From: Octopus sinensis | Lineage: Eukaryota | Direction of reading: 5' to 3' | Assembly (NCBI RefSeq): GCF_006345805.1 | Contig: NC_043018.1 | Location: 5,580,001-5,644,000, forward strand | DNA: 64,000 bases | Shown here: positions 888 through 36,984 of the stretch, piece by piece | How positions within the stretch are numbered: position 1 is the first letter of the stretch | Layout: every line of letters starts with the position of its first letter | The notes under the pieces: model-generated | The model's input: only the letters and a program-made list of their open reading frames with translations | Told to the model about the DNA's origin: nothing | The model's database searches: none | Program-made: the position numbers and the translations under genes

Positions 888-967
888 TTGATGATAACAG
901 TAGAGTCCAAGTTCATTTCAGTGAAAATAAAGGTTAAGTAAAAGAAAATCACAAAACACTTTCTTAC

Positions 968-4346
<3,379 letters not shown>

Positions 4347-8398: not shown

Positions 8399-8679
8399 TC
8401 TATATATATATCTGATATTCTTTTATTCTTTTATTCTTTTACTTGTTTCAGTCATTTTTGACTGCGGCCATGCTGGAGCACCGCCTTTAATCGAGCAACT
8501 CGACCCCGGGACTTATTCTTTTGTAAGCCCAGTACTTATTCTATCAATCTCTTTTGCCGAACAGCTAAGTAACGGGGACATAAACACACTAGCATCGGTT
8601 GTCAAGCAATGCTAGGGGGACAAACACAGACACACAGACAACACAACACACACACTCGCATACCCACAACATATATATA

Positions 8680-8737
<58 letters not shown>

Positions 8738-11136: not shown

Positions 11137-12354
11137 TCAGAAATGAATTTCATTAAAAACATAACAGACTTTCTTGATGGCATCATCTATGTCTTCTTCG
11201 TTTATATTACAGCAAATTGCAAACCGAATATCTTTACCTATAAGTTTGCAACCCACATGGATTTCCTTACCCAGTTCCTTCACTTCAGCTTCTGTGGTCT
11301 GTTTAAAAAAAAAAAAAACACAGAAATGAAGTAAATGAATAAAAAAACGAAAAAACAAAGAAGTATTCTATAAAATAAAACTTGCCAGAAATTTATATTA
11401 TAAGAACTTAGAAAACGTGTGAGATATGAAGATAGCAGATAAATCGATCAACAATTTTTTCTACTATAAGCACTTGGTCTGAAATTTTGAGAGAAGGGAC
11501 GTGTTGATTATATCGATTCCAGTCCCCAACTAGTACGTATTTTATCAACCCCTAAACAATGAACGGTAAACTTGATCTCGGCAGCATTTGAACTCGGAAC
11601 GTAAAGAGCCAAGAGAAATGTCCCCAAGCACTTTGTCCAGAATGCTAACGATTCTGCCAGCTTGCTACTGTGCTAAAGTTGTAAATAATAGCATGTAGAA
11701 TATTCAGTTAAAAAAACAAACTCTTGGATGGAAAAAAAAAGTTAGGCTCCCTCCTATATACGAATCCATACCTTCTGTCCAGAAAATATATTTATTTACA
11801 GGTTTACTATTAATTTCCGCTCATAGTTACCCCTCTTTACAAATATTTATATTTAAACCAGTAGCTTTACTTTCTGCAGAATGAAATGGATAAATAAATT
11901 AGGGATTCGCTTTCATACCGTCATTAAACGTTCTGTTAAGTTAGTGATGAAAGACATTTCTTTATCGATTTTAATAAAAACGAGATTAGTTTGGTCTTCC
12001 TCTGGTTCTATTGTCACCAATGAAGAAGAAAGATTTTTCAGACCTGAAACCAACAAAAATGAGAAACAATTCACGAATTAAAAACTTAAATAAAAAGATA
12101 ATTCTTAATTAAATAATTGAAATAATAAGAATAATTCACGAAATATATTAACTTATTAGCATGCAAATTACTCTATCAAATGTACTGCTTAATTATTCAC
12201 ATTTTTTAATTAATCAGGCGTTATCTCATAGCTTTGGGAGAAAAAAAAATGAAAGAAGACACATACACACAAATGTTACGTGAGCGTCAATATTCTAAAA
12301 ATAAGAGTTTAAAATTTAATTTCATAAATATTTATACAAGTGTGTGTGCTTGTG

Positions 12355-12404
<50 letters not shown>

Positions 12405-12601
12405 CTTTATTCACCATAAGGTTGAGAAAAAGAGGGGACAAAACAAACGTTGGGGTCAGGGTATCGAATGAGACGAAACGTATGAATAAACAAACAATTA
12501 AAATATATACAATTAAATGAGAATGAGTGAATAACAAAAAATGAAGCGGAGGACGCGGTCGACCCCACAAACCACATACTCACACTGAAGACTTTGCTTT
12601 C

Positions 12602-12637
<36 letters not shown>

Positions 12638-15600
12638 TAAGAGGGAGAGAGAGGTTGAGCGAACAAGAGAGAGATTGTTAAGATAAATATAATTTACGAT
12701 AAAATTTTAGTTTCACTTTCATCAAAATATCGACGAATTCAGAGTAAAACATCTCCTTACACTTCACCTCATTCAGTATCACTGATTGTAATTCACTCCC
12801 GCTCCCTTTGTTGCTTTAGCTTCCCTCCGCCAGTGTGACCATGTGAAGCATATTGCATTTTATTTTATGCAAGATAAGATTAGTTAAGAATTAAGAAAGC
12901 AGAATGAACTTTCAAAAGAAAATGACAAGCACAACAAAGTAGAGACGCTGCTACAAGAACGAAGTAGAAACGCTGTTGGATAATTTAGAAAGCTTCAAAA
13001 CGTTTCATTTGAGTATTATCTTTATATATAAAAGTGAGGTTGTGTGCTGTCTGTCACCTACGATTTAGATTCCTAACTACTCCCACATTTTGCGGTGCAG
13101 TTTAACCAAAAGCGGGTATCTTATAGTCGTGATTCATATCGAGCCCTTCTGGGTATTAGCGCGCATCTACGATGATCTCTACGATTAAAAAAAAAATTAC
13201 CATAAATTTTTCCCATTTTTAATGCTTTTTGGCATATATAAGGGAAGTAACTCTCTAAAATTTATTATTAAATCTCAGAACGTAAAAAGCTACAGTAACC
13301 CCCCCCCTTTGTGGTTAGCCATATTGAGATGGTATTATACTTTACATCTCTAAAAATGCTTATATAGTTATTTCCCTTACAAACCCGAGCAACGCCGGGC
13401 GATACTGCTAGTTAGATAAATACAAAAAATAAACAGAAGGACTCCAGCTCCTGTCGAGTGATTTAGAAAGTAAATCGTATAAAGTGGAACTAATTTATAG
13501 ATGGTTATGTTGTTATGTCATCTAATGTGACTCCGCTGAGAAGGCTGTGATGTTATTGTGGTAGGAACCCGGTAAAGAAATACATGGAGCAAAGGTGATA
13601 ACTTTAAATACGTTTATTGTGGTCACACGTATAGATAGATACACAAGCTGAATGGAAGTGGTTGATGGACTTTTGTTCATATATCTACATGCATCTGCGT
13701 GGGTTGTATGTTAGCTGTTAACCCTGGTGAGAAGCTCACGAACAGCGATATGTTAGAACCAGTGCAGTGTGTTGGTGCTGTGTAGATGCTTTTGACGACG
13801 TTGGTGAGAAACATCAGTGGTGGCGACGAAGATAGCGGTCGCTGCAATGTGGTCAGTGGGTAAACCTTAGAATGTCTGGAACCAACTGACGTCGAGCCTA
13901 GGAAGGGGCGAGCTTTTGTAGCTGATAGTAGGCTCAAATGCCTGTTTGAAGCAGACTATCTCACATGACTTATTTGAAGGCTGCGATTGGTTGGGTTGGA
14001 TATTGGGGCGTGATAGTGTAAGAGACAAATTGCGTCAATACCCACCAATCGGAGTGGGAGACACAACGGGGGTCCAAAACAGCGACCGAAGGTTAGCTGT
14101 TACCTGCTACGTTCGTATGTATGTAATAGAAGAGAGGAAGCTCACTAGAGTTCGCTATAAATTCAACTGCTTCAAACGCTGTTACTCACACACACAAAAA
14201 AAAGGTTATATACAAAGACATGTAGCATATTATATATATATATATATGTATACAAAATAAATATAAGAGAGTGGTCACTATATGGCTCACTCTAGCACCA
14301 GTTAATCCAAAAGGTTTCAACCACGAAAATACATGTTTCCCATGAAAGTCAGTACGATTGTTAGCTCACACGGACAGGGCAAATAAAAAATAACAAAAAT
14401 ACAGATTATTTTGGGACAATTGTTTCGCTATTAATGAATTAAATGTAATTTTACTTACAAAAAAAATCCATTGTAGCTCGTCAGCCAAACTATCTGGATG
14501 AAATCCACTCAATCACAGCCAGATTTTACCATAACGATAAATACGCGTGTGGTTCAATTGATTACATCCGACGTTATAATCAAATGCCCCAACTAACAGC
14601 GCGCCAAACTTTCACGGAAAAAAATACAGCATTTAGAAATAATGCAGCATAATTATAATTAATTAATAAGGGTGAGAGAATTAGATACTAATTTAATAGT
14701 ATATCTATTCAACACCAAGTGCCTAGTGCTCCGAGAAACCTGGATTATTATAATATTTTATAACATATTATAATATTTATACAAAATAAATATAAGAGAG
14801 TGGTCACTATATGGCTCACTCTAGCACCAGTTAATCCAAAAGGTTTCAACCACGAAAATACATGTTTCCCATGAAAGTCAGTACGATTGTTAGCTCACAC
14901 GGACAGGGCAAATAAAAAATAACAAAAATACAGATTATTTTGGGACAATTGTTTCGCTATTAATGAATTAAATGTAATTTTACTTACAAAAAAAATCCAT
15001 TTGTAGCTCGTCAGCCAAACTATCTGGATGAAATCCACTCAATCACACGCCAGATTTTACCATAACGATAAATACGCGTGTGGTTCAATTGATTACATCC
15101 GACGTTATAATTCAAATGCCCCAACTAACAGCGCGCCAAACTTTCACGGAAAACAAATACAGCATTTAGAATAAATGCAGCATAATTATAATTAATTAAT
15201 AAGGGTGAGAGAATTAGATACTAATTTAATAGTATATCTATTCAACACCAAGTGGCCTAGTGCTCCGAGAAACTGGATTATTATAAGTGACCACTCTCTT
15301 ATATTTATTTTGTATAAATATTATAATATGTTATAAAATATTATAATAATCCAGGTTTCTCGGAGCACTAGGCCACTTGGTGTTGAATAGATATACTATT
15401 AAATTAGTATCTAATTCTCTCACCCTTATTAATTAATTATAATTATGCTGCATTTATTTCTAAATGCTGTATTTGTTTTCCGTGAAAGTTTGGCGCGCTG
15501 TTAGTTGGGGCATTTGAATTATAACGTCGGATGTAATCAATTGAACCACACGCGTATTATCGTTATGGTAAAATCTGGCGTGTGTGATTGAGTGGATTTC

Positions 15601-18600
15601 ATCCAGATAGTTTTGGCTGACGAGCTACAAATGGATTTTTTTTGTAAGTAAAATTACATTTAATTCATTAATAGCGAAACAATTGTCCCAAAATAATCTG
15701 TATTTTTGTTTTTTTTATTTGCCCTGCCGTGTGTGAGCTAACAATCGTACTGACTTTCATGGGAAACATGTATTTTCGTGGTTGAAACCTTTTGGATAAT
15801 GGTGCTAGAGTGAGCCATATAGTGACCACTCTCTTATATTTATTTTGTATAAATATTATAATATGTTATAAAATATTATAATAATCCAGGTTTCCGGAGC
15901 ACTAGGCCACTTGGTGTTGAATAGATATACTATTAAATTAGTATCTAATTCTCTCACCCTTATTAATTAATTATAATTATGCTGCATTTATTTCTAAATG
16001 CTGTATTTGTTTTCCGTGAAAGTTTGGCGCGCTGTTAGTTGGGGCATTTGAATTATAACGTGGATGTAATCAATTGAACCACACGCGTATTTATCGTTAT
16101 GGTAAAATCTGGCGTGTGATTGAGTGGATTTCATCCAGATAGTTTTGGCTGACGAGCTACAAATGGATTTTTTTTGTAAGTAAAATTACATTTAATTCAT
16201 TAATAGCGAAACAATTGTCCCAAAATAATCTGTATTTTTGTTATTTTTTATTTGCCCTGTCCGTGTGAGCTAACAATCGTACTGACTTTCATGGGAAACA
16301 TGTATTTTCGTGGTTGAAACCTTTTGGATTAACTGGTGCTAGAGTGAGCCATATAGTGACCACTCTCTTATATTATTTGTATAAATATATAATATGTTAT
16401 AAAATATTATAATAATCCAGGTTTCTCGGAGCACTAGGCCACTTGGTGTTGAATAGATATACTATTAAATTAGTATCTAATTCTCTCACCCTTATTAATT
16501 AATTATAATTATGCTGCATTTATTTCTAAATGCTGTATTTGTTTTCCGTGAAAGTTTGGCGCGCTGTTAGTTGGGGCATTTGAATTATAACGTCGGATGT
16601 AATCAATTGAACCACACGCGTATTTATCGTTATGGTAAAATCTGGCGTGTGATTGAGTGGATTTCATCCAGATAGTTTTGGCTGACGAGCTACAAATGGA
16701 TTTTTTTTGTAAGTAAAATTACATTTAATTCATTAATAGCGAAACAATTGTCCCAAAATAATCTGTATTTTTGTTATTTTTTATTTACCCTGTCCGTGTG
16801 AGCTAACAATCGTACTGACTTTCATGGGAAACATGTATTTTCGTGGTTGAAACCTTTTGGATTAACTGGTGCTAGAGTGAGCCATATAGTGACCACTCTC
16901 TTATATTTATTTTGTATAAATATTATAATATGTTATAAAATATTATAATAATCCAGGTTTCTCGGAGCACTAGGCCACTTGGTGTTGAATAGATATACTA
17001 TTAAATTAGTATCTAATTCTCTCACCCTTATTAATTAATTATATATATGTATATATACTGATTTTAAACTTTGGTACTAGGCCAGCAATTTCGGAGAAGA
17101 CAATAAGTCGATTACGTCGACACCAGTGTGTGGCTCCTACCCCCAAGAATAAAGAAGCAAATGTCAAGGAAATATATTTACCGTTGACCAGTTTTTTTGT
17201 TAGAAAATGGTCCTTCCGAATGTTTTCTTCAGCTCCGTCTAAACCATATAAAGCTGCTGCAGCTTCCATACCCAGTTGAGGCATTTCACCCCCGAGGGCT
17301 TTACGACATCGTCTGACTCTGGTTATTAAAAAAAAAATAATAATTATATTAATATCTTGATATATGTGTTAAGATGTTCTCGGAGATCACTCGTAAAGCG
17401 AAAACCCGTAAAATGCAGTTGGGAAGCAAGCTTCTTTCTACACAGCCACAGCCTAGTGGTTAGGGTGTTATATTTAAAAACATGCTACAAGCTGGTCGTT
17501 TAGCTTAATGGTAGAGTATTCGGTTGGAATCTGAGGCGTACGGGTTCGAGTCCCGCAGACGTCTACTGACAGCTTTTTTTTTTTAACCAACGGTGGTGCC
17601 CCAGCATGACTACAGCTTTAAAGCTGAAACACTTAAATAACAATACCAATTGATACAAACCTTTTGATGAAAGATTCAGTGCCAGCTACTATGGACCCAA
17701 ATGGAGCACCAATTCCCTGGAATTAAAATTCAAAGAAAATCCTTTTAAAAAGATCTTAGAGATATAGAAGTAAATAATTAACAGAAGTAAATAATTAATA
17801 GACGTAAATAATTAATAGAAGTAAATTATTAATAGAGGTAAATAATTAATGTAATGAATATTTTTGTTAATTTAGAAATGAATTTATGAAAAGAGAGATG
17901 CTGTGTTGGGGGTGTCAAAGAATACACCCGACATTTCCTCTGCGTGTCATAAAGGGCGACTGAAAGAGGTCGAGGTAGGGCTTGCACTCCGATCTGGTGA
18001 AACCCTTACCAACAACGGCTACCCAAACAAACCCGTTGATTTGAGGGTTGTCCCCCCGAGCGGTGCAAGGGCGGGCAGCGTCCGCCAGGAATAGGGAATC
18101 AACAACAAATGGTGGATGCAGCGAGGCGCTGTCATAGGGCATGCCCCCTTATTACTACTACTACTACTACTTGTCTTCCAACTTCAATTGGTGACAATTT
18201 GAACTTCCAGAACACCACAGCGTGTTTTTTTTTTAATAACCTCAGTGTTATTTTGTACTAAAATCTATTGACAAGGTTCTTCCATACCATTGTGAAATAG
18301 GTTCTCCTGTAAGAGTCCAGTCCTTGGACATTCACCAAAGACATAGAGGCAAGGTTTGATGGCATTTACACCTTCATGTTAGGGGCAATTCCGAATATCG
18401 CGTCGAAAAAAGCAGCATCTCATGAAACAAAGACCGTATGGCAGTCTTCTTGCAATCAAGTTTATTATTCGAGAGAGACTCATACGATTTGCAGGACATT
18501 GCTGGAGGGTTAAACAACAACTGATTAGTGACACACTAATCCTTGTTGATCTCGCGAATGCTATGATGGGTGGCATAATAAAATCAAATAAATCCGAGAA

Positions 18601-18895
18601 ATATTGACCAGATGATACTCATTTGTTAATATGACATGGTATAGTGGTTATCACGTCTGCTTCACACGCAGAAGATCGTGTGTTCGAAACTCGCTGGAAC
18701 CCTGCCTTGCCTTGCTTTGTTTTATAGGCGTAGGAGTGTCTGTGTGGTAAGTAGCTTGCTTTCGAACCACATGGTTCCGGGTTCAGTCCCACTGCGTGGC
18801 ACCTTGGGCAAGTGTCTTCTACTATAGCCTCGGGTCGACCAAAGCTTTGTGAGTGGATTTTGTAGACAGAAACTGAAAGAAGCCTGTTGTATATA

Positions 18896-18926
<31 letters not shown>

Positions 18927-21900
18927 CTGTGTCTGTGTATTTCCCCCCCAAACATCCCTTGAAACCGATGCTGGTATGTTTACGTCCCCGTCACTTAGCG
19001 GTTCGGCAAAAGCCTCGGGCCGACCAAAGCCTTGTGAGTGAATTTTGTAGATAGAAACTGAAAGAAGCCTGTTGTATATATGTATATGTGTGTGTGTGTG
19101 TGTGTGCGTGCGTGCGTGTCTGTGTGTGTGTATGTGTGTGTGTGTGTGTGTGTGGTGTTTGTGTATGTCCCTCCAAACATCGCTTGAAACCGATGCTGGT
19201 GTGTTTACGTCCCCGCCACTTAGCGGTTCGGCAAAAGACACCAATAGAATAAGTACTAGGCTTACAAAGAATAAGTCTTGGGGTTGATTTGCTCGATTAA
19301 AGGCGGTGCTCCAGCATAGCCACAGCCAAATGACTGAAACAAGTAAAAGAGTAAAAAGAGTAGAGAATGTCAGACTATGAACTGAAAGATCTTGGTAGTG
19401 AACACAAAAACCCAACACACTGGCCGGCGCAGGACACGAAACCACAACGGAAAGATCATAGTTGCAACACCTTAATACATTTCCTAATTAACTATACACA
19501 TTAACCCCGCTACTATGCGTGTGGCCTTGTAGTTAGGCTGTTGCATTCACAATCACTAAATCGTGGGTTCGATTCCCAGACGGGGCGGCGCGTTGTGTTT
19601 TTGAGCAAAATATTTAATTTCATGTTGTTCCAGACCACTTCGATCAATGGTAAATGCTCTCCTAGCCAGTGCAATGACGTCATTTGAAGACTAAAACAAT
19701 ACAAAATTGTATTGTAATCAGTGATGTGTAACAACGTCTGACAGATTAGTCGGTCATGTGATCACATGGTCACGTGATTAAGCTCAACACAAGGTTGAGT
19801 CCTTGTTGCAGTATAGTACCTTGTATGTCTCAAAGTCCAAGACTTTGAGTCACTTTTCCCAGAGGTAAAAAAAGGGTTGGCAGAGGGCTAAAACCCCTAC
19901 ACAGGAAAAAGTCAATGAAGCAATGATACCAATACAAAATCAACAAGATCTGGGAGAGTATGGCCCTCGGGGAAGCGTACGAGAGTAACTCTCACACTGG
20001 GGTATGCGTCTGCCCAGAGAACAGTGGAGAAAAGCCATTGACGGCCAATGCGAAGTAAGAGACCTTTAACCATAATATCATAAAAAATACCCCTTACCTT
20101 ATTAAGACAAAAAGTGACAGAATCACAGAATTTTGTTATCTCTGAAACAGGAACACCAAGTCCAACGGCTGCATTCAAAATACGTGCGCCATCCACGTGA
20201 ACCTTTATATCATTTTCTTGGGCTAGATTGTACAACTGCAAAAATAAAAAATATTATTTAATCAGTAACAATGTGTTACACGGTTTTTGTCCTTGGGCAG
20301 CAACTATTATTTTCTATTTGCTTGCCTCTAGAAATTATGACCTTGCTTTCAAACTTTCAGAAATTATTCCAGGTTGTTCCAGCGGTACAACCTGGAATTG
20401 TATTGTCTTGTATTGTCTTGTATTGTCTTGTATTGTCTTGCTGCTGTGGAGGCGCGTGGCTTAGTGGTTAGGGTGTCAGCATCATGATCGCAAGATTGTG
20501 GCTTCGATTCTTGGACCGGGCGACGCGTTGTGTTCTTGGGCAAAACACTTCAATTTCACGTTGCTCCAGTCCACTCAGCTGGCAAAAATGAGTAACGCTG
20601 CAATGGACTGGCGGCCCATCCAGCTTCGGAACACACACACCATGGAAACCAGGAAACCGGGCCCATGAGCCTGGTTCGGCTTTAAAAGGGCGCATTTATT
20701 TATTTATTTATTGTCTTGCTGCAGAAGAGCCTGCTTTCTGTTAACCAATGCCGTGCATTTATGCCGCACAATGGCACACATCCGTAAGATGCCGAACTCA
20801 CCTCATACTCTCTGAGTGCTACTCGCCAGATTTGCCTCGATGGCTTAGGACACGACCTCAGAATCCACGGTTACCTGATCATCAAACTACTTGACCTCCT
20901 ACGGTCAGGTGATATACACGTCGCACACTTGCACGTGTGAAAATATTTGTTTCAAATGGTGGCACATGGCCAGAAAATACAGATGAGGGGTTAGGTCGAT
21001 TACATCGACCCCTGTGTTTCACTGGAACTTATTTTATCGACCACGAAAAGATAAAAGGCAATGTCGAACTCGGTAGAATTTGAACCCGGAATATAAAGTC
21101 GGACGAAATAACGCTATGCATTTTTCCTGGTGTGCTAACGATCTTACTAGTTGGCTGTCCTCACGTATGCAAATATTGCAAAGCTTTTGAGTCGCCTCAA
21201 TATTACATCACTTCATTATGCATTGATAATCATACCAAATCATTATGCGTTGATATCAAATAAATTTTCTTTACTACCCACAAGGGGCTAAACATAGAGG
21301 GGACAAACAAGGACAGACAAAGGGATTAAGTCGATTACATCGACCCCAGTGCGAAACTGGTACTTTATTTATCGACCCCGAAAGGATGAAAGGTAAAGTC
21401 AACCTCGGCGGAATTTGAACTCAGAACGTAACGACAGACGAAATACCTATTTCTTTATTACCCACAAGGGGCTAAATACAGAGGGGACAAACAAGGACAG
21501 ACACACGGATTAAGTCGATTACATCGACCCCAGTGCGTAATTGGTACTTATTTAATCGACCCCGAAAGGATGAAAGGCAAAGTCGACCACGGCGGAATTT
21601 GAACTCAGAACGTAGCGGCAGACGAAATACGGCTACGCATTTCGCCCGGCGCGCTAACAATTCTGCTATATCACTGCCTTCTATTGATATCCAATAAATC
21701 ACTCCAACAGGCCCCGATATTCAATGGTCATACTCCGATCTTATGATACCAGTTGCCACAATGTTTCAATATCGAGTGAACCAATCACAGTACCTTGACA
21801 GGCACAGGTGTGGTTCCGTGGTTAAAACGTTTCAGGTTCAGTCCCGCTGCGCAACATCTTGGAACAGTATCTACTATATCTCAGGGCTGACAAAATCTTT

Positions 21901-21962
21901 TAGTGTTGGTAGATAGAAACTGGAAGGAACCAGTCGTATATTGAATGTATGTATGTACGTAT

Positions 21963-22016
<54 letters not shown>

Positions 22017-23429
22017 ACTCTTGTCTAGACATCATATGATGGCTGTAAATGAGTACCATCGTCATACAAGCGTTCATTTATAATCTTCCGTGAAAAAAAA
22101 AAACATGTCTAGCTTCGCTGTTGGAAAATATTACCTTATTTGGAAAACATCCGGTCATAGAAAATCCATCTCAACAAATTTCGTCTGACTCATGCTAGCA
22201 ATGAAAAGTGGACGTTTAATGATCATGATGATGATGGTGGTGGTGGCGACAACGGTGATGATGATGATGACAATGATGTTGATGACAATGATGTTGATGA
22301 CAACAATGATGATGATGACAACGATGATGATGATAATGATGGTGACGACGACGACGACGACGATAAAGGATGATAGCAGTAGGGCTGACCATCGCAAAAG
22401 ACCTTCTTACCTTTTGTAAAAAGTCCAACGGTAAAATACTCCCAGCGCATAAAGTATGAGTGTTTTCTAGGCAGATAACTTTGGTTCTACATACATCATT
22501 TCCGTCTGATGTTGATATTGTCTCGGCTAATGTGGTTAAATCGTGAGTTCCATCTTTTAGAGTGGGGACGCTTCTTGGAAAAACTCCAGCCAACTGTGAA
22601 AAAAGATTCATCACAATGCCATGATTCTAAAAGTGAACGATTTTACTCATACACACATCTACATACACACTTAAATATAACGTGAATGAATAAGATTATA
22701 CTTACATGGAAACGAATTTACGTAAATACGTGAGGTTTCCAGGAGTATGGTTTTCTGTAACCCACATTTTTGGGGGCTGCCAGGAGCTCACTCTACGTAT
22801 TTGCATGCTCTTTTGAAAAATTGATGTAACAATTGTATTCTATTGATCTGAAGAGCAAGCCTTCTATGTCTGCATTGGATTGTATAATGTACAACAGCAC
22901 TATGCAAATTATAACACACACACTTGTACAGACAATGGGATATTTTTGTAAGTGTCTCATTTATAACTACATATTAACCTATCACACATGGCTAATATGA
23001 ACATAATGAATCACCCATATCTGCATGGCCGAAACAGCTGTAAGATGTAGTTTATATTTATATTTGTATTTATTTATATTCACTTATACATACTGTACTT
23101 ACTGTATCATATTACTCTTTCATGTACATTGTTTTGTCCTATATTATTATGTTTGACCGAAATGTTCATATGTAATGGTTTAATAAATTATGTGATTGGG
23201 CATTATCTGGTAGTTGATGATTGATTAAGGTGTATTTCTCCATTTTCTTATTTTGTATTATTAATTTGTGGTAAAGCATTTTACCTTTGCCCATATAATA
23301 CAGTAAATGAATTAACTGCATCGCAGTTCTTAACATTTATGTATTAACTTTGTTGGGTGCTTCACCAGCAGTATATTGGATATATGTTATCCAATGGAGG
23401 GTTGCACTTACAACCCCTATCTTAATTTG

Positions 23430-23482
<53 letters not shown>

Positions 23483-24648
23483 TTGCTAGGGGAGATAATT
23501 GTTCACTCATTCATTTTGCAGTAAAGGGGAGGTAAATCTGTAATTTAAATTATTTTTGTTTTTTGTGTTCTCTATTTTATTATGGCTTACATCTTGCATT
23601 AGATGGGGTAAATCCTTTATCTTTAGTATGGGTTCATTTATGTAACTAGATGCTCAAGGAAATTCGATCCGCAAGAGATGTATGGTCCATAGACAACAAA
23701 TTTCCTCCCCACGATATCGCCAAATATATCTCACTCAACACATTGACGAATATGCAGGACGATTACATCCACAAATCGTAATTTTCAACTTGCTCTCTGG
23801 ACCTCAACACAAGTAAGACTGAATAAAGAAGTCTCATCTATCTAAAAATATAAACCAGAATTAAATAAAGGACGTACTCCATCTAATATAAGATATCAAT
23901 CATAATAAAATAGAGAATACAAAAACAAAAACAAACATAAATATTACAGATTTACCTCCCCTTTACTGCAAATTGAATGAGTGAACAATTATCTCCCCTA
24001 GCAATGCGAAACCAGTCCTTACTTCAATTACGTTGAAAGAACAAAACCTAGTTTTGTACAAAATTGTATATATCTAATATCATGGCTGTGATATAATCTT
24101 AAATCCTGTAAAACATACCTTCTGTGATTTTTCTATATATATCCACCACGTATCTTTCCCCAGTAAAATATTTTCTACCTTATACATGATGGCCGTCCAC
24201 TCGTGACCGAGGAAGACCATTGCCGACCTTCAGGAACATTGTGCGCTCTAGGACTAACTTATATTTTGCATTTGCGGCTCCGTTGGTGGCTAATTAGCCC
24301 TGCTCTTGACAAGCATACACAACTGCAAACATTGCAGACCAAGCTTTCCCCATTCACTATACGAGCCGTGCGCTTTCGCACAGCTCGCCTAAGTTCTTCA
24401 TGCTGGATACGCGCTCTCTCAAAAATGTCGATCCCCTCCTTAACCTGCTTCCTCCATCTGTGGTGATGACAGGCATTGTTCTCCCAGTCAGTGTCCTGCA
24501 TATCAAAGGCCTTTAACGAGGACTTGACACAGTCCTTAAATCGCAGCCTTGGTTTTCGCCGGAGTCTCCTTCCATTCACAAGTTCTTCATAGAGCATCTG
24601 CTTAGGAATCTTTCTACCTTATACATACATACATACATACATACACAC

Positions 24649-24720
<72 letters not shown>

Positions 24721-24838
24721 ATATAGCTCTGGAATTTTAATTTTTCTATTGAAATTGTTGCTGAATTCTTGCACAAAGGGAAATACTTGTGCTACTTACG
24801 AAATACATATTCCAATCCCTAAGAATAACATGCTCTCT

Positions 24839-24871
<33 letters not shown>

Positions 24872-26477
24872 ATACACACATACACACACAGGCATATACA
24901 TATATACATATAATGCATATAAAAGTAGTGAGAAGATTAGCAACCTACCTGAGCAACGTGGCCTTGTTCAGCTAAATATAAATGAGACTTATCCCCCATC
25001 AGAACCTCGAGTCCTCTCTCCTGACAGTGGCTCATAACTGTAAAAAGGATTTAAAAGAAATTAAATGCTTTATGTTAAGAAAGCCTTTATAAAGAACAAT
25101 AATCGTTTCATTTTCTTCCAAGTCATCTTCAGTCTGTATGTTGCCTAACTATTAATGTAACCACATCAAATATCCTGCATGTTTCACCCGTTATTTTACA
25201 TATCTATCTATATATATAAAGCTGAAGTTGTCTGTGAATGGCGGGTTTGGTAGCCTTCAACGAACACTATCTCCTCCGAGACCCTGCGGCGCAAGTTGAC
25301 CAAAACTGAGAGTATGATAGAAGAAGGTTTGCTCTTCATTCCGTAGAAGAAAAAAATCAAATCGGACCATGTTAAGACCAAAAATTATTTACATCAAAAA
25401 GGTGCTTTTTTTCTATGAAAATCCCTATTTTTTACGAGCTTTTGACTGCTGTGTCGCCATTTTTCGGTATATTTCAACCAGAAAAATTTTCACTTAAAGA
25501 GAATAACAAGCTACATAATGCAAAAGTTTTACTTTTCAAAAATTCCAATTCTAAAGGGTAGAAACAAACCCGAGCAACGCCGGGCGATACCGCTAGTATT
25601 ATGATAAATAGATGAGAATATTCTCTGGTACCCTCGGGTACCTCTCTATCTCACTTCTAGTTACTCTCACCTACCCTTGCATAATGTGGGGGTAACAACA
25701 TATCTTCTCTATAGCAGGACAGCTGTGCTTGTCCCTTCATCATACTTTAGCCTACAACACCTGGTATAAAGCCACCGCCTCGTCTTCTCTTTGATTGACT
25801 CTCCATTCGGTTGAGGGGGCCATCTCTGTCTACTTTTTTATTCATTGTTTTGCAAGCTACTTGGTGATTTCACTAATGCTGGTCGCGGGGGAAAAAAGCA
25901 CTCCGGCTATAAACGATGGCGAAAGGTCACATTGATAGCAAAAAGAAAAGAACAAAAACAGGTAAAAGAAAACGAAAACAAAACAATCAAATAAAACATT
26001 ATGTAATAACTTACTGCTTAATAAATTTGCCATGGTCCCTGTAGAAACAAGCAAGGCCTTTTCTTTGCCAAGAAGTTTTGCACATTTTGCTTCTAAAGCT
26101 GAAATTTTAAAGAAGAATAAATAAATAGTTTTTAGTTTGTTTAACAGTTACTAAGACGACATCAAGGTACCATCTTCACACACGCATGCATGACGCACGC
26201 ACACACAGCCACATACATACACAGATAAATAGATAGAGAGAGAGGGGGGGGACAAGAGAGAGTGAGAGAATTATATATAAAACTAGAAACATGTATGTGG
26301 TGGTGGTGATATACTGTTGAAGCTTTATAAAAAATATTAAAAAAACAATTAATAACTAAAATTTTTACCTAGAACCATCGGATCTTCTCCTACATCAGCA
26401 TTGGCCATGGCTTCTCTCATGGCCTTGGAAGGTTTTGAGAATATATCACTTATCATATCCACAAATTTTGGGGCCAT
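11137..26477 (-). CDS. L-threonine aldolase-like paralog B, complete 9-exon CDS, 1083 nt, 360 aa
   Basis: Exons 26369-26477, 26015-26098, 24949-25037, 22411-22593, 20098-20235, 17661-17716, 17182-17318, 11919-12043 and 11137-11298 (TGA at 11137-11139). All boundaries are GT-AG and the lengths sum to 361 codons with no stop. Motifs: SH83, LENTH, HVDGAR (D170/R173), CLNK201-GIGAPFGS (PLP lysine), RKALGG, QTNLVF, IR332F. Confidence 0.95.
13019..13411 (+). mobile_element. Non-autonomous Helitron
   Basis: A|TC 5' end, 3' hairpin plus CTAG|T; same family as 7385-8398. Confidence 0.85.
14409..14489 (-). ncRNA. Type I hammerhead ribozyme motif, sense to the aldolase B pre-mRNA
   Basis: Reverse complement of the array motif with an intact core; cleavage C at 14415. 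Confidence 0.83.
14938..15019 (-). ncRNA. Type I hammerhead ribozyme motif, sense to the aldolase B pre-mRNA
   Basis: Reverse complement of the array motif with an intact core. The stem I 5' strand is one U shorter; cleavage C at 14944. Confidence 0.85.
15611..15693 (+). ncRNA. Type I hammerhead ribozyme motif
   Basis: TTTTGG (stem I) CTGACGA GCTA...TAGC (stem II) GAAA CAATTG T C CCAAAA (stem I'). Predicted cleavage is after GUC at 15687. Confidence 0.88.
16143..16225 (+). ncRNA. Type I hammerhead ribozyme motif
   Basis: Same motif as 15611-15693; cleavage C at 16219. Confidence 0.88.
16676..16758 (+). ncRNA. Type I hammerhead ribozyme motif
   Basis: Same motif as 15611-15693; cleavage C at 16752. 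Confidence 0.88.
17494..17584 (+). ncRNA. tRNA-like Pol III unit (pseudo-tRNA or isolated SINE head) with oligo-T run
   Basis: A-box TAGCTTAATGGTAGAG at 17501, stem TTCGG/CTGAG with loop TTGGAAT, B-box GGTTCGAGTCC at 17543, and T11 at 17574-17584. The acceptor stem is imperfect. Confidence 0.55.
18630..18702 (+). pseudogene. tRNA-Val-derived pseudogene (anticodon CAC)
   Basis: TGGTATAGTGGTTATCACGTCTGCTTCACACGCAGAAG..GTTCGAAAC..TGGAACC closely follows the metazoan tRNA-Val body. The 5' acceptor strand (expected GGTTCCA) is lost and the T stem is mismatched. Confidence 0.75.
20446..20700 (+). mobile_element. tRNA-headed SINE family C (CORE-like domain)
   Basis: GGAGGCGCGTGGCTTAGTGGTTAGGG head, GTGTTCTTGGGCAAAACACT..GCTCCAGTCCACTCAGCTG core and a (TTTA)n tail. 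Other copies: ~19510-19760, 53997-54190, 60555-60870(-). Confidence 0.75.
23490..24004. repeat. Inverted repeat pair (~75 bp) about 370 bp apart, in aldolase B intron 3
   Basis: tattgctaggggagataattgttcactcattca...aggtaaatctgtaat (~23480-23550) versus its reverse complement at ~23942-24005. Confidence 0.65.
24190..24612 (-). mobile_element. RTE-like LINE 3' fragment
   Basis: LYEEL..GRR...PRLRFKDCVK..LK...DWE...RWR, followed by a C-terminal CxxC...H knuckle. Confidence 0.85.
25207..25596 (+). mobile_element. Non-autonomous Helitron with a different interior
   Basis: A|TC start and the same 3' hairpin plus CTAG|T, but an unrelated middle. It is absent from the homologous intron 2 of paralog A. 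Confidence 0.8.
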
Positions 26478-27202: not shown

Positions 27203-27710
27203 CTGTAGCACACACACACACACACACACATGTAATACATGAAGTGGACGCCAAATTAAGCAGTGACTTTATCAGATATATTGCATCATTCAAGGAATCG
27301 TTATCTTGGTGATTCCTTTACCATTATGGGCTAAACCTGACAAAGCATTGTACAAATTTTCTAAGATTTTCACAAATCTGTATACAGCTATTAAGTTCAC
27401 AAGAGAGGCAAATACGCACGGATTAGCATTTCTGGATATCTTAATAATTACAAAACCATTGAAATGTGTTGGAGGTGGGGACACAAATACAGATACACAA
27501 ACATACACACATACACACATATATATTCATACGACGGGCTTCTTTCAGTTTCCGTTTACCAAATCCACTCACAAGGCTTCGGTCGGCCCGAGGCTATAGA
27601 AGACACTTGCCCAAGGTGCCACGGACTGAACCCAGAACCATGTGTTGGTAAGCAAGCTACTTACCACACAGCCACTTCTACGCCTATACATATATATTAT
27701 ATATATATAA

Positions 27711-27760
<50 letters not shown>

Positions 27761-28190: not shown

Positions 28191-28873
28191 TTTGGATTCT
28201 TTACACTCTGAGTTCAAATTCCGCCGACCCTTTCAGGGTCGATAAATTAAGTAACAGTTGCATACTGGGGGGCCTTCTAATCGACTAGCCACCACCCCTA
28301 CAATTTCAGGCCTTGTGCCCAGAGTAGAAATGAATTAAAAAAACTTCAAGTGAACATGAGATAATTCTGTTTTGGAACGTTGGATCCTGAAGCAGATAAA
28401 CTATAAACTTCGGTTTTAGATTTTGTCACAAGGCCAGCAATTTCGGAGGAGGCGAATAAGTCGGTTACATCGACCTCATTGCTTAACTATTACTTATTTT
28501 ATCGACCCCCGAATAGAGCAAACTAATTCTTCGAACTTCTCTATCCGTCTTAGAAACCGTTTTCTTATCAGCTACAGCTGCATGTTGCTGATGCTATAAG
28601 AATTTTATAAACCTCAAAATATCAGGAAATAATTCTTATTTGGAACGTTGGATCTTGAAGCAGGTAAGCAATAGATAGTAGCATGTAATAGAGAAATTCG
28701 AAGGATTGCTTTGCTGCGATGGTAGAATGCTTCTCATACTTACAAAAGATATGGGTTGAAGTTTGATGAGCAACTTTCGACTTTTGATGTTTACACGCTT
28801 TTATCTATAGCTTATCTACTTTGAGATCAACGTTCCAAACAAGAAAAAAAGGAAAAAAAATGTATGTGTATGT

Positions 28874-29278
28874 AGGCGTAGAAGTGGATGTGTGGTAAGT
28901 AGCTTGCTTACAAACCACATGGTTTCGGGTTCAGTCCCACTGCGTGGCACCTTGGGCAAGTGTCTTCTACTATAGCCTCGGGCCGACCAAAGCCTTGTGA
29001 GTGGATTTGGTAGACGGAAACTGAAAGAAGCTCGTCGTATATATGCATATATATATATATGTGCGTGTTTGTGTGTCTGTGTTTGTCCCCCCAACATCGC
29101 TAGACAACCGATGCTGGTGTGTTTACGTCCCCGTAACTTAGCGGTTCGGCAAAAGAGACCGATAGAATAAGTACTAGGCTTGCAAAGAATAAGTCCTGGG
29201 GTCGATTTGCTCGACAAAAGGCGGTGCTCCAGCATGGCCACAATCAAATGACTGAAACAAGTAAAAGAGTAAAAGAGG
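28874..29278 (+). mobile_element. SINE family A, full-length copy
   Basis: Near-consensus copy of the 1395-1790 family. Confidence 0.85.
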
Positions 29279-29540: not shown

Positions 29541-30840
29541 ATGATTGATTGATTGATTGATTGATTCCAGTTTCAGCTTATGAGCTGTGGCCATGCTGGG
29601 CACCGCCATTTGGTGTTGCTACTTGGTTTCACTTCATGGAGGCTTTCTAGCAACTGCTATTTGGTGCATGAGAGAGTTCGATGCAGCTGCCCTCATCTGC
29701 CCCTCCTGTCGTGAAGTTGGTTCATCTGGGACACCTGACAGGAAGAGATCCAGCTCCATTTTAAGACATCTGTATCCACCCCATGCAGGTCTCTCAGGTT
29801 CATCGGGAGGATATTGAAGAGCTGTGGGCCTCGGAAGCCAGGCTATCACAGAATCTTGTCCTACATCTTGATGGCAAGTTTGGAGTCCTAGGCACCACGC
29901 AGTGGCGCCCAGTTCTGGCGTTTGCGTAACTCTCGATGCCAAAGTTCAGGACACTTCCCTCCAGGATCTTCCAGATGTATATTATGGCATATCTTTCCCG
30001 CCTACGCTCCAGGGAATATAATTTTAATCTCTTGAGTCTTTCCCAGTAGCTTACATTCTGCATAGAGGCTATCTTCTTCGTGTAGCTTCGTTGGATCGCC
30101 TCAAGTTCTGTGATCAACTTGACACTGGATGGTGACCATAGCTGAGAGCATAGTCAAAGTGACTTAGGACAAGTGTCTTCCAGAGGACCATCATGGTTTC
30201 TTGTTCTCTGTTCTAAAGGTTCTAAGAATCCATCCAGCCAGCCGTCTGCATTTCATTGTCAGTTTAGCAACATGTACATGAAAGGTCGCGTCATCACTCA
30301 TGTGAATACCAGGTCACGCACTGATTGTGCTCTGGATTGCATCCCTCCGGGTCCAGTGTATTCCTTGGGTATGCATTCAGTTTTGCATGCTGATAGTATA
30401 AAGCTTGAAACTTTTCAGCATTGAACTGCATGCTATTCTTTTCAGCCCACTTGTATATTTCGTCCAGCTCATATTGCAGGTGCCTAGTGTCTTCAGGGTT
30501 CTGTATTGCCTGTGAAACTTTTGTATCATCTGCATAACTTGTGATCGTGGCTCTCCGCGTGGCTGAGGGCATGTCTGAGAGGGCCATTATGAACAGTAGT
30601 GGTCCCAAAACAGTGCCCTGTGGAACACCGCTCACTATTTGCGTGCTAATGGCTACTACCACCTGACTTCTATTCTTCAGAAAGTCGTGAAGCCATTCTC
30701 CTAGTTTTCCAACTATGCCAAGATCACGCAGTTTGTGACATATCATTCCATGATCGACTTTATCGAAGGCCTTTGCGAAGTCGAGATATATGACTTCCAC
30801 ATTTGAGTGGTTGAGCAGTTGTTTCAGCACCCAGTCATAT
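29541..30840 (-). mobile_element. 5'-truncated CR1/L2-group LINE (reverse transcriptase, frameshifted)
   Basis: DFAKAFDKVDHG, SGVPQGTVLGPLLF, YADDTK and LYSLERRRERY motifs, with an (AATC)n tail. Confidence 0.9.
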
Positions 30841-35639: not shown

Positions 35640-36510
35640 AGGATATCACTGGAAGTCTCTTGCTGGATCTCTACACAGTCGGCGACCATTGGGTGATGGA
35701 TGTTCCAACACAGAACTTGTGAGTCACTGTGCTGTCCGTATTCTCCAGTGGTGACAAAGCAGGTCTATTTAGACCCAGCACTGTTTTCCTCAACAAGAGG
35801 AGGGACGAGAAAGGAAGCCTCCAACATTGCTTACTTACCTTAAACTTGGCAGCCCGCTGCAGCTGTCTGGTTATTCAGTTAAGCAGTCGAAACATGAAGA
35901 AATCTAAGAATATTAATCTTGGTTCTTGGAATGTGCGCACTCTCTAAGACAGTCACTCAGCACCAGAACGAAAAACAGCACTGGTTGCCCTTAAACTAAA
36001 GAAATACAACGTTGACGTAGCTGAACTCAGTGGAACTCGTTTTGCAGGATTATTACAGCTAGAAGAAAGTAAAGGTGGATACATATTTTTCTGGCGTGGA
36101 AGAAATGAAAACGAGCCACGCCATTCTGGTGTTGGCTTTGCCATCAAAACAGAAATAGCTAAATTCACTTTCATAAAAGGCTAGACATCTTCCACAAAGA
36201 CTGTCTAAGGACAATCTGCGGTTATTCACTAAAAGACAGTTTCTAATGCCGATCTGTTTAGCAAGTGTAAAATTAGTGGAATCCAGAGCTTCCTTATATA
36301 ATCACAATTGCGGTGCGCTGACCATGTCGTCAGAATGAGTGACGAAAGAATACCCATATTCCTCATGTACAGCCAGCTTAAGAGGGGGCACAGGGACGGT
36401 GGTCGACCATGGTTCAGATACAAGAACAAGCTGAAGAGTAACCTCTTAGAACTGAAGATAGCTCACAACACCTTTGGAATGAACAAAATGGAGATTGTTG
36501 TGTCAGGAAT
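35640..36510 (+). mobile_element. Internally deleted RTE-like LINE
   Basis: SWNVRTL...SGVGFAIK (APE) is directly followed by DHVVRMSDERIP..LMYSQL..G.R..GRP..RYK (RT C-terminus). Confidence 0.8.
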
Positions 36511-36984
36511 TTAGAAAATTAGGACTTAACCGAACACAACATTGCAGATTCAAAAAATCTATATTTATACTTTAAAGTTGGTTTTCGCACCCAATCTTGT
36601 TCTACATAATCAGTGTCGCGGCAGGAACGCATGGGTTGGGAGTTTGACCGGCAGAGGTGATCAGGTTGCACATGCTAGCCCTTTCGAACCCCCTATCATC
36701 TAACCCCTCTTGGCTGATGGGTTGGGAGCCCTTCCAGCAAGGAAAATAGAACGCCCAAAAGCGCTCTCGGTCCTCTCTGTCAGAAGAGGTTATGTTCGGA
36801 TCACAACTAAGCCTTAACCTAAGCTTAAGCTAACCTAGTGAAAGTGGGCTCAGGAGCCTCTGAAAGGGAGCGACTAATCCCTATCTAGACCTAACCGCTC
36901 CTAGGGGTACTATTGGTTAAGGTTGCATTGAAGGTTTGCACGCTGAAAACGAATATATAAACGTGTATATATATATACACAATA

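What the first reader, a model, noticed from the sequence alone, without database searches (positions are those of the whole stretch)
14251..16350. Array inversion puts two sense ribozymes and a ~1-kb fold-back into the aldolase B pre-mRNA
Seen: the array flips at ~15286 (..GGATTATTATAA|GTGACCACTC..), so the ribozyme strands diverge. The host gene is transcribed from the minus strand, so intron 7 RNA carries the two minus-strand hammerheads in sense (cut sites 14944 and 14415) and both arms of a ~1-kb inverted repeat. Inference: the intron could self-cleave co-transcriptionally and release a 529-nt monomer from the host transcript. Alternatively it could fold into long dsRNA that masks the ribozymes and is an ADAR substrate, which is relevant because coleoid cephalopods edit RNA heavily. 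Caveat: unit 1 has several single-base dropouts typical of unpolished long reads. However, both left units share a stem I variant (CCAAAC) absent from the right units, and the flanks are not mirrored, which argues against a simple fold-back read artefact.
Basis: partly seen in the sequence, partly recalled or inferred. Interest (0 to 1): 0.7.

Follow-up and report, generated by a model that had tools for sequence, protein, structure and literature searches.

The report
Head-to-head hammerhead retrozyme array in intron
A young, non-coding mobile element carrying hammerhead ribozymes sits as two opposed tandem arrays in an intron of an octopus threonine aldolase gene; it is a new example of a known element type, and its RNA should fold into about 1 kb of double strand that hides the ribozymes.

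Summary
Window 14249-17043 is a 2.8-kb array of a 536-bp, AT-rich, non-coding unit. About 1.95 units lie on the minus strand, then 3.3 units on the plus strand, joined head-to-head at 15286/15287. Every full unit carries a complete type I hammerhead core. The cleavage sites are 14415 and 14944 (minus) and 15687, 16219 and 16752 (plus).

The window is Octopus sinensis GCA_006345805.1. The host is a low-specificity L-threonine aldolase paralog on the minus strand, not fructose-bisphosphate aldolase B. The array is in its intron 7.

I read it as a young non-LTR retrozyme. Three features match the insertion pattern described for Penelope-like elements: a tandem array with an inverted 5'-truncated copy at its 5' end, a (TA)n target site, and a 6-12-bp duplication flanking the whole composite. 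A later inversion fits less well.

In the pre-mRNA the antisense arm is transcribed first. The minimum-energy fold pairs 1034 of 1043 left-arm bases with the right arm, and both sense ribozymes are buried. Masking in long dsRNA, a likely ADAR substrate, is therefore better supported than self-cleavage. No RNA or read data could be examined. Verdict: new member of a known kind, of moderate interest.

The parts
14249..15286 (-). Left arm. About 1.95 retrozyme units with the hammerhead-sense strand on the minus strand, the same sense as the host gene. In sense orientation it runs from consensus position 55 at the inner end (15286) to position 30 at the outer end (14249).
   Evidence: Unit alignment and consensus; repeat families D4-D8 and I1-I25.
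15287..17043 (+). Right arm. About 3.3 units with the hammerhead-sense strand on the plus strand, antisense to the host gene. It runs from consensus position 1 at the inner end to about position 155 at the outer end.
15287..15354 (.). Head-to-head junction (15286|15287, with 1 nt of microhomology) and the unpaired loop of about 68 nt in the fold-back. This loop is right-arm sequence (consensus 1-54) with no counterpart in the left arm.
   Evidence: (I9: 81 nt between the arms).
14931..15026 (-). Sense hammerhead in unit L2 (type I). Core spans 15014-14944, with cleavage 3' of C17 at 14944. Helix I has 5 bp plus a bulge, because its T run is T3 instead of T4.
14402..14496 (-). Sense hammerhead in unit L1. 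Core spans 14484-14415, with cleavage at 14415. It has the same T3 helix I and lacks one extra A in the internal loop of helix II.
15604..15700 (+). Hammerhead in unit R1, antisense to the host gene. Core spans 15617-15687.
16136..16232 (+). Hammerhead in unit R2, antisense to the host gene. Core spans 16149-16219.
16669..16765 (+). Hammerhead in unit R3, antisense to the host gene. Core spans 16682-16752. This is the copy scored by Rfam.
14241..14252 (.). Left copy of TATATATGTATA within a (TA)n microsatellite. The strict target-site duplication is TATATG at 14243-14248. The last 4 nt overlap the homology to the unit.
17042..17053 (.). Right copy of TATATATGTATA. The strict duplication is TATATG at 17044-17049. 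The first 2 nt overlap the homology to the unit.
12044..17181 (-). Intron 7 of the L-threonine aldolase paralog (5138 nt; donor AACG|GTAAAT, acceptor TTTCAG|GT). The array makes up 54% of the intron and begins 138 nt downstream of the 5' splice site.

Best explanation
**What it is.** This is a young insertion of a non-autonomous, non-LTR 'retrozyme'. The unit is 536 bp, 32% G+C and non-coding. It carries one type I hammerhead per unit and is predicted to form a highly self-paired RNA monomer.

**How it got there (inferred).** It landed in a (TA)n microsatellite in intron 7 of an Octopus sinensis L-threonine aldolase paralog. The head-to-head form was made in one integration event and is not a later inversion. 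Multimeric cDNA was copied from a circular or multimeric template. Copying was primed from both nicked target strands at TA-rich sites of the unit (consensus positions about 30 and about 155), and it ran towards the RNA 5' end from both sides. The two products were then joined in the middle. This is the partial-tandem-plus-inverted-5'-truncated-copy pattern described for Penelope-like elements, which have been proposed as the mobilisers of animal retrozymes.

**Consequence in the host (inferred).** The host pre-mRNA first transcribes the antisense arm (3.3 units) and then the sense arm (1.95 units). The sense arm zips onto the antisense arm as it emerges and forms about 1.04 kb of near-perfect intramolecular dsRNA. 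This sequesters both sense hammerheads, so little self-cleavage of the intron is expected. The hairpin is instead a likely substrate for ADAR hyper-editing, and possibly for small-RNA pathways.

**Status of each step.** Shown: the DNA structure, the motif, the gene context and the thermodynamic fold. Inferred: the integration mechanism, the masking in vivo and the editing.
For: **Retrozyme features.**
- The hammerhead core is complete: CUGACGA, G10.1-C11.1, GAAA, and a 2-bp helix III capped by an AAUU tetraloop with a GUC cleavage site. Rfam Hammerhead_1 matches positions 1-45 of 45.
- Helix III is of the form reported for invertebrate retrozyme hammerheads (PMC7229834).
- The array is tandem, has low G+C, has no ORF longer than 69 codons, and its unit ORF has no protein homologue.
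- The monomer RNA folds at -152.4 kcal/mol, z = -7.8 against shuffles, and its two ends are paired in helix I.
- The units differ by 0-5 substitutions per about 500 bp, which fits a single recent event.

**Penelope-like architecture.**
- Here the sense strands diverge from the centre, so the arrangement is 5'-to-5'. The site is a (TA)n run. TATATG, up to TATATATGTATA, flanks the whole composite.
- Both flanks align to the paralogous locus L002 right up to the (TA)n. L002 lacks the array.
- L002 intron 6 holds a separate, decayed relative. It is also a head-to-head pair (117-nt arms, 94% complementary, 75-77% identical to consensus 338-459) and also lies next to a (TA)n run.
- Retrozymes have been linked to Penelope-like element terminal repeats, and about 43% of the Xenopus copies overlap introns (bioRxiv 10.64898/2026.07.22.740005).

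**Masking.**
- The minimum-energy fold of pre-mRNA 17179-14100 is -1977 kcal/mol. In it, 1034 of 1043 left-arm nt pair with the right arm and both sense hammerheads are 100% paired in trans. An isolated hammerhead domain folds at only -22 to -27 kcal/mol.
- Hyper-editing in Metazoa, with octopus among the strongest cases, targets long near-perfect dsRNA formed by neighbouring inverted repeats (PMC5625713).
Against: - No independent assembly or raw reads could be examined. The region shows about 25 single-base indels, which suggests poor polishing. Unit counts and the exact junction could therefore be wrong.
- The target duplication lies in low-complexity TA sequence and could be coincidental.
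- No other full copy of the family was found in about 180 kb of O. sinensis sequence held here. Dispersal, the core property of a mobile family, is therefore not shown.
- No octopus Penelope-like element with a matching terminal repeat was identified.
- The Rfam score is below the gathering threshold.
- Both left units share a T3 run in helix I that the right units lack. This is unexpected if both arms were copied from one template.
- Masking is a thermodynamic prediction. Co-transcriptional kinetics, helicases or editing could free the ribozymes.
Confidence: 0.6

Rival explanations
1. Secondary rearrangement, the reader's 'array inversion'. A direct tandem array inserted or grew first. Part of it was later inverted, or duplicated in inverted form, by recombination or by a fold-back template switch during replication.
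For: - The unit contains short internal palindromes, such as TTATAATAT...ATATTATAA near the junction, which could promote a template switch.
- The two left units share an indel that is absent from the right units. This could mean the arms diverged after insertion.
Against: - Un-inverting 14249-15286 places consensus position 30 next to position 1, and position 55 next to the flank. A regular array is not restored.
- The inverted DNA abuts the left target duplication directly. One breakpoint would therefore have to fall exactly at the edge of the element.
- The arms are as similar to each other as units within one arm are.
- A decayed relative in L002 has the same head-to-head form.
Confidence: 0.15
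2. Assembly artefact. The long-read assembly mis-joined or folded back reads inside a simple direct array, so the orientation switch, or at least the unit numbers, is not real.
For: - The region carries many single-base indels typical of unpolished long reads.
- Published work notes that complex tandem/inverted Penelope-like insertions often cause assembly problems (PMC8557442).
- Only one assembly, GCA_006345805.1, was available. The window is identical to it.
Against: - The left unique flank joins a minus-sense unit and the right unique flank joins a plus-sense unit. Both flanks are validated by alignment to a paralog up to the (TA)n. An orientation switch is therefore required somewhere between them, whatever the internal layout.
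- The junction is asymmetric, with a 68-nt loop and arms of 1.95 and 3.3 units. The flanks are not mirrored. A missed-adapter or fold-back read would not give this.
Confidence: 0.13
3. Functional self-cleaving intron. The two sense hammerheads cut the nascent intron 7 at 14944 and 14415. This releases a 529-nt monomer that can circularise, and it may affect exon 7-8 splicing or transcript levels.
For: - Both sense copies keep all core nucleotides and helices I-III.
- Retrozyme RNAs from invertebrates self-cleave efficiently in vitro and accumulate as circular RNAs (PMC7229834).
- Sense intronic hammerheads exist in amniotes (cited in PMC7761336).
Against: - The complementary arm is transcribed first and lies only about 68 nt from the start of the sense arm. 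The duplex is favoured by nearly 2000 kcal/mol and covers both ribozymes fully.
- The insertion is absent from the paralog L002 and shows no sign of conservation.
- Retrozymes are depleted from introns in Xenopus relative to intergenic DNA.
Confidence: 0.1

Closest known systems
Metazoan non-LTR retrozymes (Cervera & de la Pena 2020, PMC7229834; Li, Clavereau & Pollet 2026 preprint)
   Same: - Tandem repeats with one type I hammerhead in each unit.
- Low G+C, no ORF, and no LTR, PBS or PPT.
- A target duplication longer than 4 bp.
- A highly self-paired predicted monomer RNA.
- Helix III made of 2 bp plus a tetraloop, as in invertebrate retrozymes.
- An intronic location, which is common for this class.
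   Different: - The unit of 536 bp is longer than the 170-400 nt first reported, though within the 51-972 bp range of the 2026 survey.
- Helix II carries an extension of about 55 nt. This pushes the motif below Rfam's threshold and past its filters.
- The array is split into two opposed arms. Neither retrozyme paper describes this in the passages I searched.
- Expression as circular RNA and dispersal in the genome are untested here.
Penelope-like element insertion architecture (Craig et al. 2021, PMC8557442)
   Same: - A partial tandem with an inverted 5'-truncated copy immediately at its 5' end.
- Insertion into a microsatellite.
- Hammerhead motifs within the repeated part.
   Different: - There is no RT or GIY-YIG ORF in the element, so it would be non-autonomous.
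- The hammerhead is a full canonical type I motif, not the minimal variant typical of these elements' terminal repeats.
- No 30-40-bp 'tail' was recognised.
- No sequence match to an octopus Penelope-like element was available.
L1 twin priming (5' inversion during target-primed reverse transcription)
   Same: - Two cDNAs are primed from the two nicked target strands and meet in the middle.
- The outer ends show microhomology to the target: TATA and GTATA here.
- A target duplication flanks the whole composite.
   Different: - There is no poly(A) tail.
- The template would be a circular or multimeric RNA, giving several units per arm.
- The enzyme would be a Penelope-like RT/GIY-YIG protein, not an L1 ORF2p.
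Hammerhead satellite DNAs of newts, schistosomes and cave crickets (cited in PMC7229834)
   Same: Tandem repeats of several hundred bp that are transcribed into self-cleaving monomers by type I hammerheads.
   Different: Those are large satellite arrays. This is a five-unit insertion inside a gene intron, with two arms in opposite orientation.
Intronic inverted-repeat dsRNA as an ADAR hyper-editing substrate (Porath et al. 2017, PMC5625713)
   Same: - Two inverted copies of one repeat lie in the same pre-mRNA and form long, near-perfect dsRNA.
- Octopus shows one of the strongest hyper-editing signals.
   Different: - Here the two copies come from one insertion event. The arms are about 1 kb long and about 98% complementary, and they contain ribozymes.
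- Editing at this locus was not examined.

Membership tests
Type I hammerhead ribozyme (Rfam RF00163) | Conserved catalytic core: C3-U4-G5-A6-N7-G8-A9, G12-A13-A14, and a U16.1-H17 cleavage site | tested here: met
   CUGACGA ... GAAA ... GUC| is present in all five copies.
Type I hammerhead ribozyme (Rfam RF00163) | Three helices around the core, with helix I open-ended (type I topology) | tested here: met
   - Helix I: 5-7 bp, then an internal loop, then 5 bp.
- Helix II: 4 bp, then extended.
- Helix III: 2 bp plus an AAUU loop.
Type I hammerhead ribozyme (Rfam RF00163) | Score at or above Rfam's gathering threshold (34 bits) | tested here: not met
   The score is 30.1 bits (E = 5e-6 in a 151-nt search) and spans the whole model. 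The shortfall comes from a 40-nt insertion in helix II. The motif was not reported at all in the whole-window and 3.6-kb searches.
Type I hammerhead ribozyme (Rfam RF00163) | Self-cleavage activity | not testable with these tools
   This needs in vitro transcription of a monomer and a dimer.
Non-LTR retrozyme | Tandem repeats with a type I hammerhead in every unit | tested here: met
   All five full or near-full units carry the motif.
Non-LTR retrozyme | Non-coding, low G+C (<45-50%), and no LTR, PBS or PPT | tested here: met
   G+C is 32%. The longest stop-to-stop frame is 69 codons. The unit ORF has no protein homologue.
Non-LTR retrozyme | Target-site duplication longer than 4 bp, when present | tested here: inconclusive
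   TATATG (strict), up to TATATATGTATA, lies on both sides, but inside a (TA)n run where chance matches are easy.
Non-LTR retrozyme | Stable, highly self-paired monomer RNA | tested here: met
   -152.4 kcal/mol against -110.4 +/- 5.4 for shuffles, z = -7.8.
Non-LTR retrozyme | Dispersed multicopy family in the genome | tested here: inconclusive
   Only one decayed relative was found, in L002 intron 6, at 75-77% identity. None was found in L003, L004 or the rest of the window. A whole-genome search is not possible with these tools.
Non-LTR retrozyme | Expression as linear and circular monomer RNA | not testable with these tools
   No RNA data were accessible.
Penelope-like-element-type insertion | Partial tandem with an inverted 5'-truncated copy adjacent to its 5' end | tested here: met
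   The sense strands diverge from 15286/15287. The left arm is truncated at consensus position 55 and the right arm starts at position 1. Feature as described in PMC8557442.
Penelope-like-element-type insertion | Insertion bias for microsatellites | tested here: met
   The array interrupts a (TA)n run. The paralog L002 has the uninterrupted flank sequences and a long (TA)n at the same place.
Penelope-like-element-type insertion | Sequence relationship to the terminal repeat of an autonomous Penelope-like element in the same genome | not tested
   No octopus Penelope-like element sequence was available. A GIY-YIG-like motif seen by eye near 37080-37300 was not confirmed by Pfam.
Penelope-like-element-type insertion | 30-40-bp 'tail' extension at one end | tested here: inconclusive
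   No distinct extra segment was recognised between the unit homology and the flank at either end. The feature is only described as 'often' present.
Conserved intronic hammerheads of amniotes (HH9/HH10 type) | Conservation of the motif at an orthologous or paralogous intron position | tested here: not met
   The array is absent from the homologous site of the closest paralog, L002. The units are near-identical, which points to a recent insertion.

The most novel reading that the evidence does not exclude
The head-to-head retrozyme acts as a built-in hairpin-RNA locus. Host-gene transcription through intron 7 would produce about 1 kb of perfect dsRNA, which would be hyper-edited by ADAR or processed into small RNAs that silence the retrozyme family in trans. 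The same duplex would keep two otherwise competent sense ribozymes conditionally off, so that editing or helicase activity would decide whether the intron is cut. Separately, the locus would be the first structural evidence from a mollusc that animal retrozymes integrate through the Penelope-like-element pathway. That evidence would be the inverted 5' arm, the microsatellite target and the duplication around the whole composite.
Probability: 0.12. Interest if true: 0.7.

Novelty: new member of a known kind. Interest (0 to 1): 0.4.

Why it matters
- **Link to Penelope-like elements.** Animal retrozymes have only recently been tied to these elements, and on phylogenetic grounds in vertebrates. 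A very young cephalopod copy shows an insertion signature like theirs: an inverted 5'-truncated arm, a microsatellite target, and a duplication around the whole composite. If genome-wide copies behave the same way, this would be independent structural support for that link.
- **Annotation gap.** Hammerheads with a long helix II escape routine Rfam annotation, so cephalopod ribozyme counts may be underestimates.
- **A natural test case.** The locus sets ribozyme folding against long-range dsRNA formation in a heavily editing animal.
- **Consequence for the host gene.** It is probably just a tolerated intronic insertion.

Tried and rejected
- **Rfam at gathering thresholds.** The whole window and L002+L003 gave no hammerhead.
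- **Rfam E-value search on 3.6 kb.** This returned only spurious hits driven by the palindrome: WsnRNA46, mir-9256 and MIR2599. I rejected them as artefacts of the fold-back.
- **Search for other copies or expression through unit ORFs.** Neither the exact look-up nor the homologue search found anything.
- **Pattern scans of JGI metagenome and IMG/VR contigs.** Both gave 0 hits.
- **O. bimaculoides ortholog.** The locus could not be fetched because that isoform is not on record.
- **L003 (paralog P0004) and L004 (paralog P0009).** Neither holds a copy of the unit, and intron 7 of L003 is not alignable at the insertion site.
- **Fructose-bisphosphate aldolase B.** Rejected: Pfam gives Beta_elim_lyase and the best hits are L-threonine aldolases.
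- **L002 as an empty allele.** Rejected: its protein is only 90% identical to the window's gene, so it is a paralog.
- **GIY-YIG reading of ORF 36936-37757.** Pfam did not confirm it.

Full report
**1. What is in the sequence**

Window 14249-17043 is an array of a unit of about 532 bp. Using GTGACCACTCTC as an anchor, the units are R1 15287-15821, R2 15822-16355, R3 16356-16888 and a partial R4 to 17043, all on the plus strand. On the minus strand they are L2 15286-14808 (5'-truncated), L1 14807-14279 and a 30-nt partial unit to 14249.

The majority consensus is 536 bp with 32% G+C. Its longest stop-to-stop frame is 69 codons.

The units differ by 0-5 substitutions and 3-14 indel columns per pair. 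Nearly all indels are private single bases. A length difference in a homopolymer, within a region full of single-base indels, is weak evidence for anything.

**2. The ribozyme**

Rfam did not report a hammerhead at gathering thresholds on the window. It also missed it in an E-value search of 3.6 kb. That search returned only hairpin-shaped families matching the palindrome centre.

In a 151-nt search, Hammerhead_1 (RF00163) matched end to end (model positions 1-45 of 45). The score was 30.1 bits with E = 5e-6, against a gathering score of 34. The shortfall comes from a 40-nt insertion in helix II.

The pattern CTGACGAGCTAC-N(30-60)-TAGCGAAAC occurs five times, against 0 expected. A descriptor requiring helices I, II and III plus a U-H cleavage site finds exactly these five motifs in the window. 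It places C17 at 14415 and 14944 (minus) and at 15687, 16219 and 16752 (plus).

Helix III is 2 bp capped by AAUU. Cervera and de la Pena describe this form as typical of invertebrate retrozyme hammerheads (PMC7229834).

The cleavage-to-cleavage monomer (16220-16752) folds at -152.4 kcal/mol, against -110.4 +/- 5.4 for shuffles (z = -7.8). Its two ends are brought together in helix I.

**3. Where it is**

A 21.3-kb locus fetched for the best protein hit is 100% identical to window 8137-29477. The window is therefore Octopus sinensis GCA_006345805.1, chromosome CM016880.1.

The host gene encodes XP_036368104.1, 'probable low-specificity L-threonine aldolase 2' (Pfam Beta_elim_lyase, E = 8e-45). 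It is not fructose-bisphosphate aldolase B.

The gene has nine coding exons on the minus strand. The array lies between exon 7 (17320-17182) and exon 8 (12043-11919), which is intron 7. It starts 138 nt after the 5' splice site and fills 54% of the 5138-nt intron. A second paralog (P0004) lies downstream at window 4346-965 and beyond.

**4. Is the orientation switch real?**

No reads or second assembly could be reached, so this question stays open. The internal evidence, however, favours a real switch.

- An unplaced contig of the same assembly (L002) carries a third paralog, 90% identical in protein.
- L002 aligns with the window's right flank up to 17050 and with its left flank from 14243. 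In both cases the alignment ends at a (TA)n run.
- Both array-flank junctions are therefore bona fide. The left flank joins a minus-sense unit and the right flank joins a plus-sense unit.
- An orientation switch must then exist between them, whatever the assembler did inside the array.
- The junction is asymmetric: the loop is 68 nt and the arms are 1.95 and 3.3 units. The flanks are not mirrored. This excludes a simple fold-back read.

**5. How it arose**

A later inversion is not parsimonious. Un-inverting the left arm would place consensus position 30 next to position 1, and one breakpoint would have to coincide with the edge of the element.

The whole composite is flanked by TATATG, or by TATATATGTATA if bases shared with the unit are counted, at 14241-14252 and 17042-17053. 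Both outer junctions show 4-5 nt of TA-rich microhomology between the unit and the target.

The sense strands run outward from the centre. This is the geometry expected if two cDNAs were primed at the two nicked target strands and met in the middle.

[quoted passage not shown] They note that such insertions trouble assemblies (PMC8557442). A 2026 preprint derives animal non-LTR retrozymes from the terminal repeats of Penelope-like elements, and reports that about 43% of the Xenopus copies overlap introns. The passages I searched in that preprint and in PMC7229834 do not describe inverted arms.

L002 intron 6 gives a second, independent case. It holds a decayed relative arranged as a head-to-head pair: arms 17135-17251 and 17312-17428, 94% complementary, 75-77% identical to consensus 338-459, and next to a (TA)n run.

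No further copies were found in L003, L004 or the rest of the window. Dispersal of the family is therefore not established.

**6. What the RNA should do**

The host pre-mRNA reads the array from 17043 down to 14249, so the antisense arm is made first and the sense arm second.

- The minimum-energy fold of 17179-14100 is -1977 kcal/mol. In it, 1034 of 1043 left-arm bases pair with the right arm and both sense hammerheads are fully paired in trans.
- An isolated hammerhead domain is worth only -22 to -27 kcal/mol.
- The arms are 97.8-98.5% complementary over about 1040 nt.

I infer that the hairpin zips up from its 68-nt loop as the sense arm emerges, and that little self-cleavage occurs. The resulting duplex is the kind of substrate that is hyper-edited across Metazoa. 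Octopus is among the strongest cases (PMC5625713).

It remains a prediction.

**7. Verdict**

The element is a new member of a known kind, the non-LTR retrozymes. Three points are of modest specialist interest:
- the long helix II, which hides the motif from routine Rfam annotation;
- the 536-bp unit;
- the head-to-head form with a microsatellite target and a flanking duplication, which fits mobilisation by Penelope-like elements.

The main uncertainties are the lack of read-level confirmation, the lack of genome-wide copies, and the absence of any RNA evidence.

Noticed in passing
window 965-4346 (minus), window 11140-26477 (minus); L002, L003, L004: L-threonine aldolase is present as a cluster of paralogs on O. 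sinensis chromosome CM016880.1. These are P0001, P0004 and P0009, found in three separate look-ups within about 100 kb, plus a fourth copy (P0121, 90% identical to P0001) on unplaced contig VCDQ01004223.1.
   Followed up: partly
L002 16960-17428: Intron 6 of the paralog on L002 holds a decayed relative of the retrozyme, arranged as a head-to-head inverted pair. The arms are 117 nt, 94% complementary, separated by 60 nt, and 75-77% identical to consensus 338-459. The element lies next to a (TA)n run. A 51-nt segment that resembles the unit's end by eye is duplicated at 16968-17018 and 17048-17098. The hammerhead core is no longer intact.
   Followed up: partly
L002 25712-25746 (minus): A solitary minimal hammerhead-like motif, CCAC-CUGAAGA-UUGU...ACAA-GAAAC-AAUU-GUA-GUGG, shares the GAAACAATTGT helix III sequence with the retrozyme. 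It lies in AT-rich DNA. Chance was not excluded, and Rfam's gathering search of L002 found nothing.
   Followed up: no
window 16640-16790 versus the whole window: Infernal/Rfam reports the hammerhead only when given a very short stretch (30.1 bits). With 3.6 kb or 64 kb, the speed filters drop it. Routine annotation would miss this family.
   Followed up: yes
window 17494-17566 (+) and 18635-18696 (+): There are two tRNA-like sequences. The first is called tRNA-Ser(GGA) by ARAGORN and scores 34.2 bits in Rfam. It lies in intron 6 of the host gene, antisense to it, and about 450 bp from the array. The second adjoins a SINE-like repeat and was not called by ARAGORN. Both may be heads of tRNA-derived SINEs.
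   Followed up: partly
window 1394-1800, 8415-8694, 18723-19366, 27483-27756, 28857-29277, 60146-60546; L002 5109-5533, 7539-8368, 18024-18416: An interspersed repeat of about 400 bp, probably a SINE, is present in many copies at 85-94% identity, on both strands. In L002 one copy sits at the same (TA)n site that holds the retrozyme array in the window.
   Followed up: no
window 30294-30830 (minus); 35729-36514 (+); 36936-37757 (+): - 30294-30830 (minus) is a reverse-transcriptase fragment (Pfam RVT_1, E = 6e-19).
- 35729-36514 (+) holds ORF pieces that look like LINE endonuclease and C-terminal fragments by eye; Pfam found nothing for them.
- The ORF at 36936-37757 contains a YIGQTGRRL...EH stretch that resembles a GIY-YIG nuclease by eye. 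Pfam gave no hit, so a Penelope-like origin is unconfirmed.
   Followed up: partly
window 15220-15406: The centre of the palindrome draws sub-threshold Rfam hits to unrelated hairpin families: WsnRNA46, mir-9256 and MIR2599. These are artefacts of the fold-back, not genes.
   Followed up: yes
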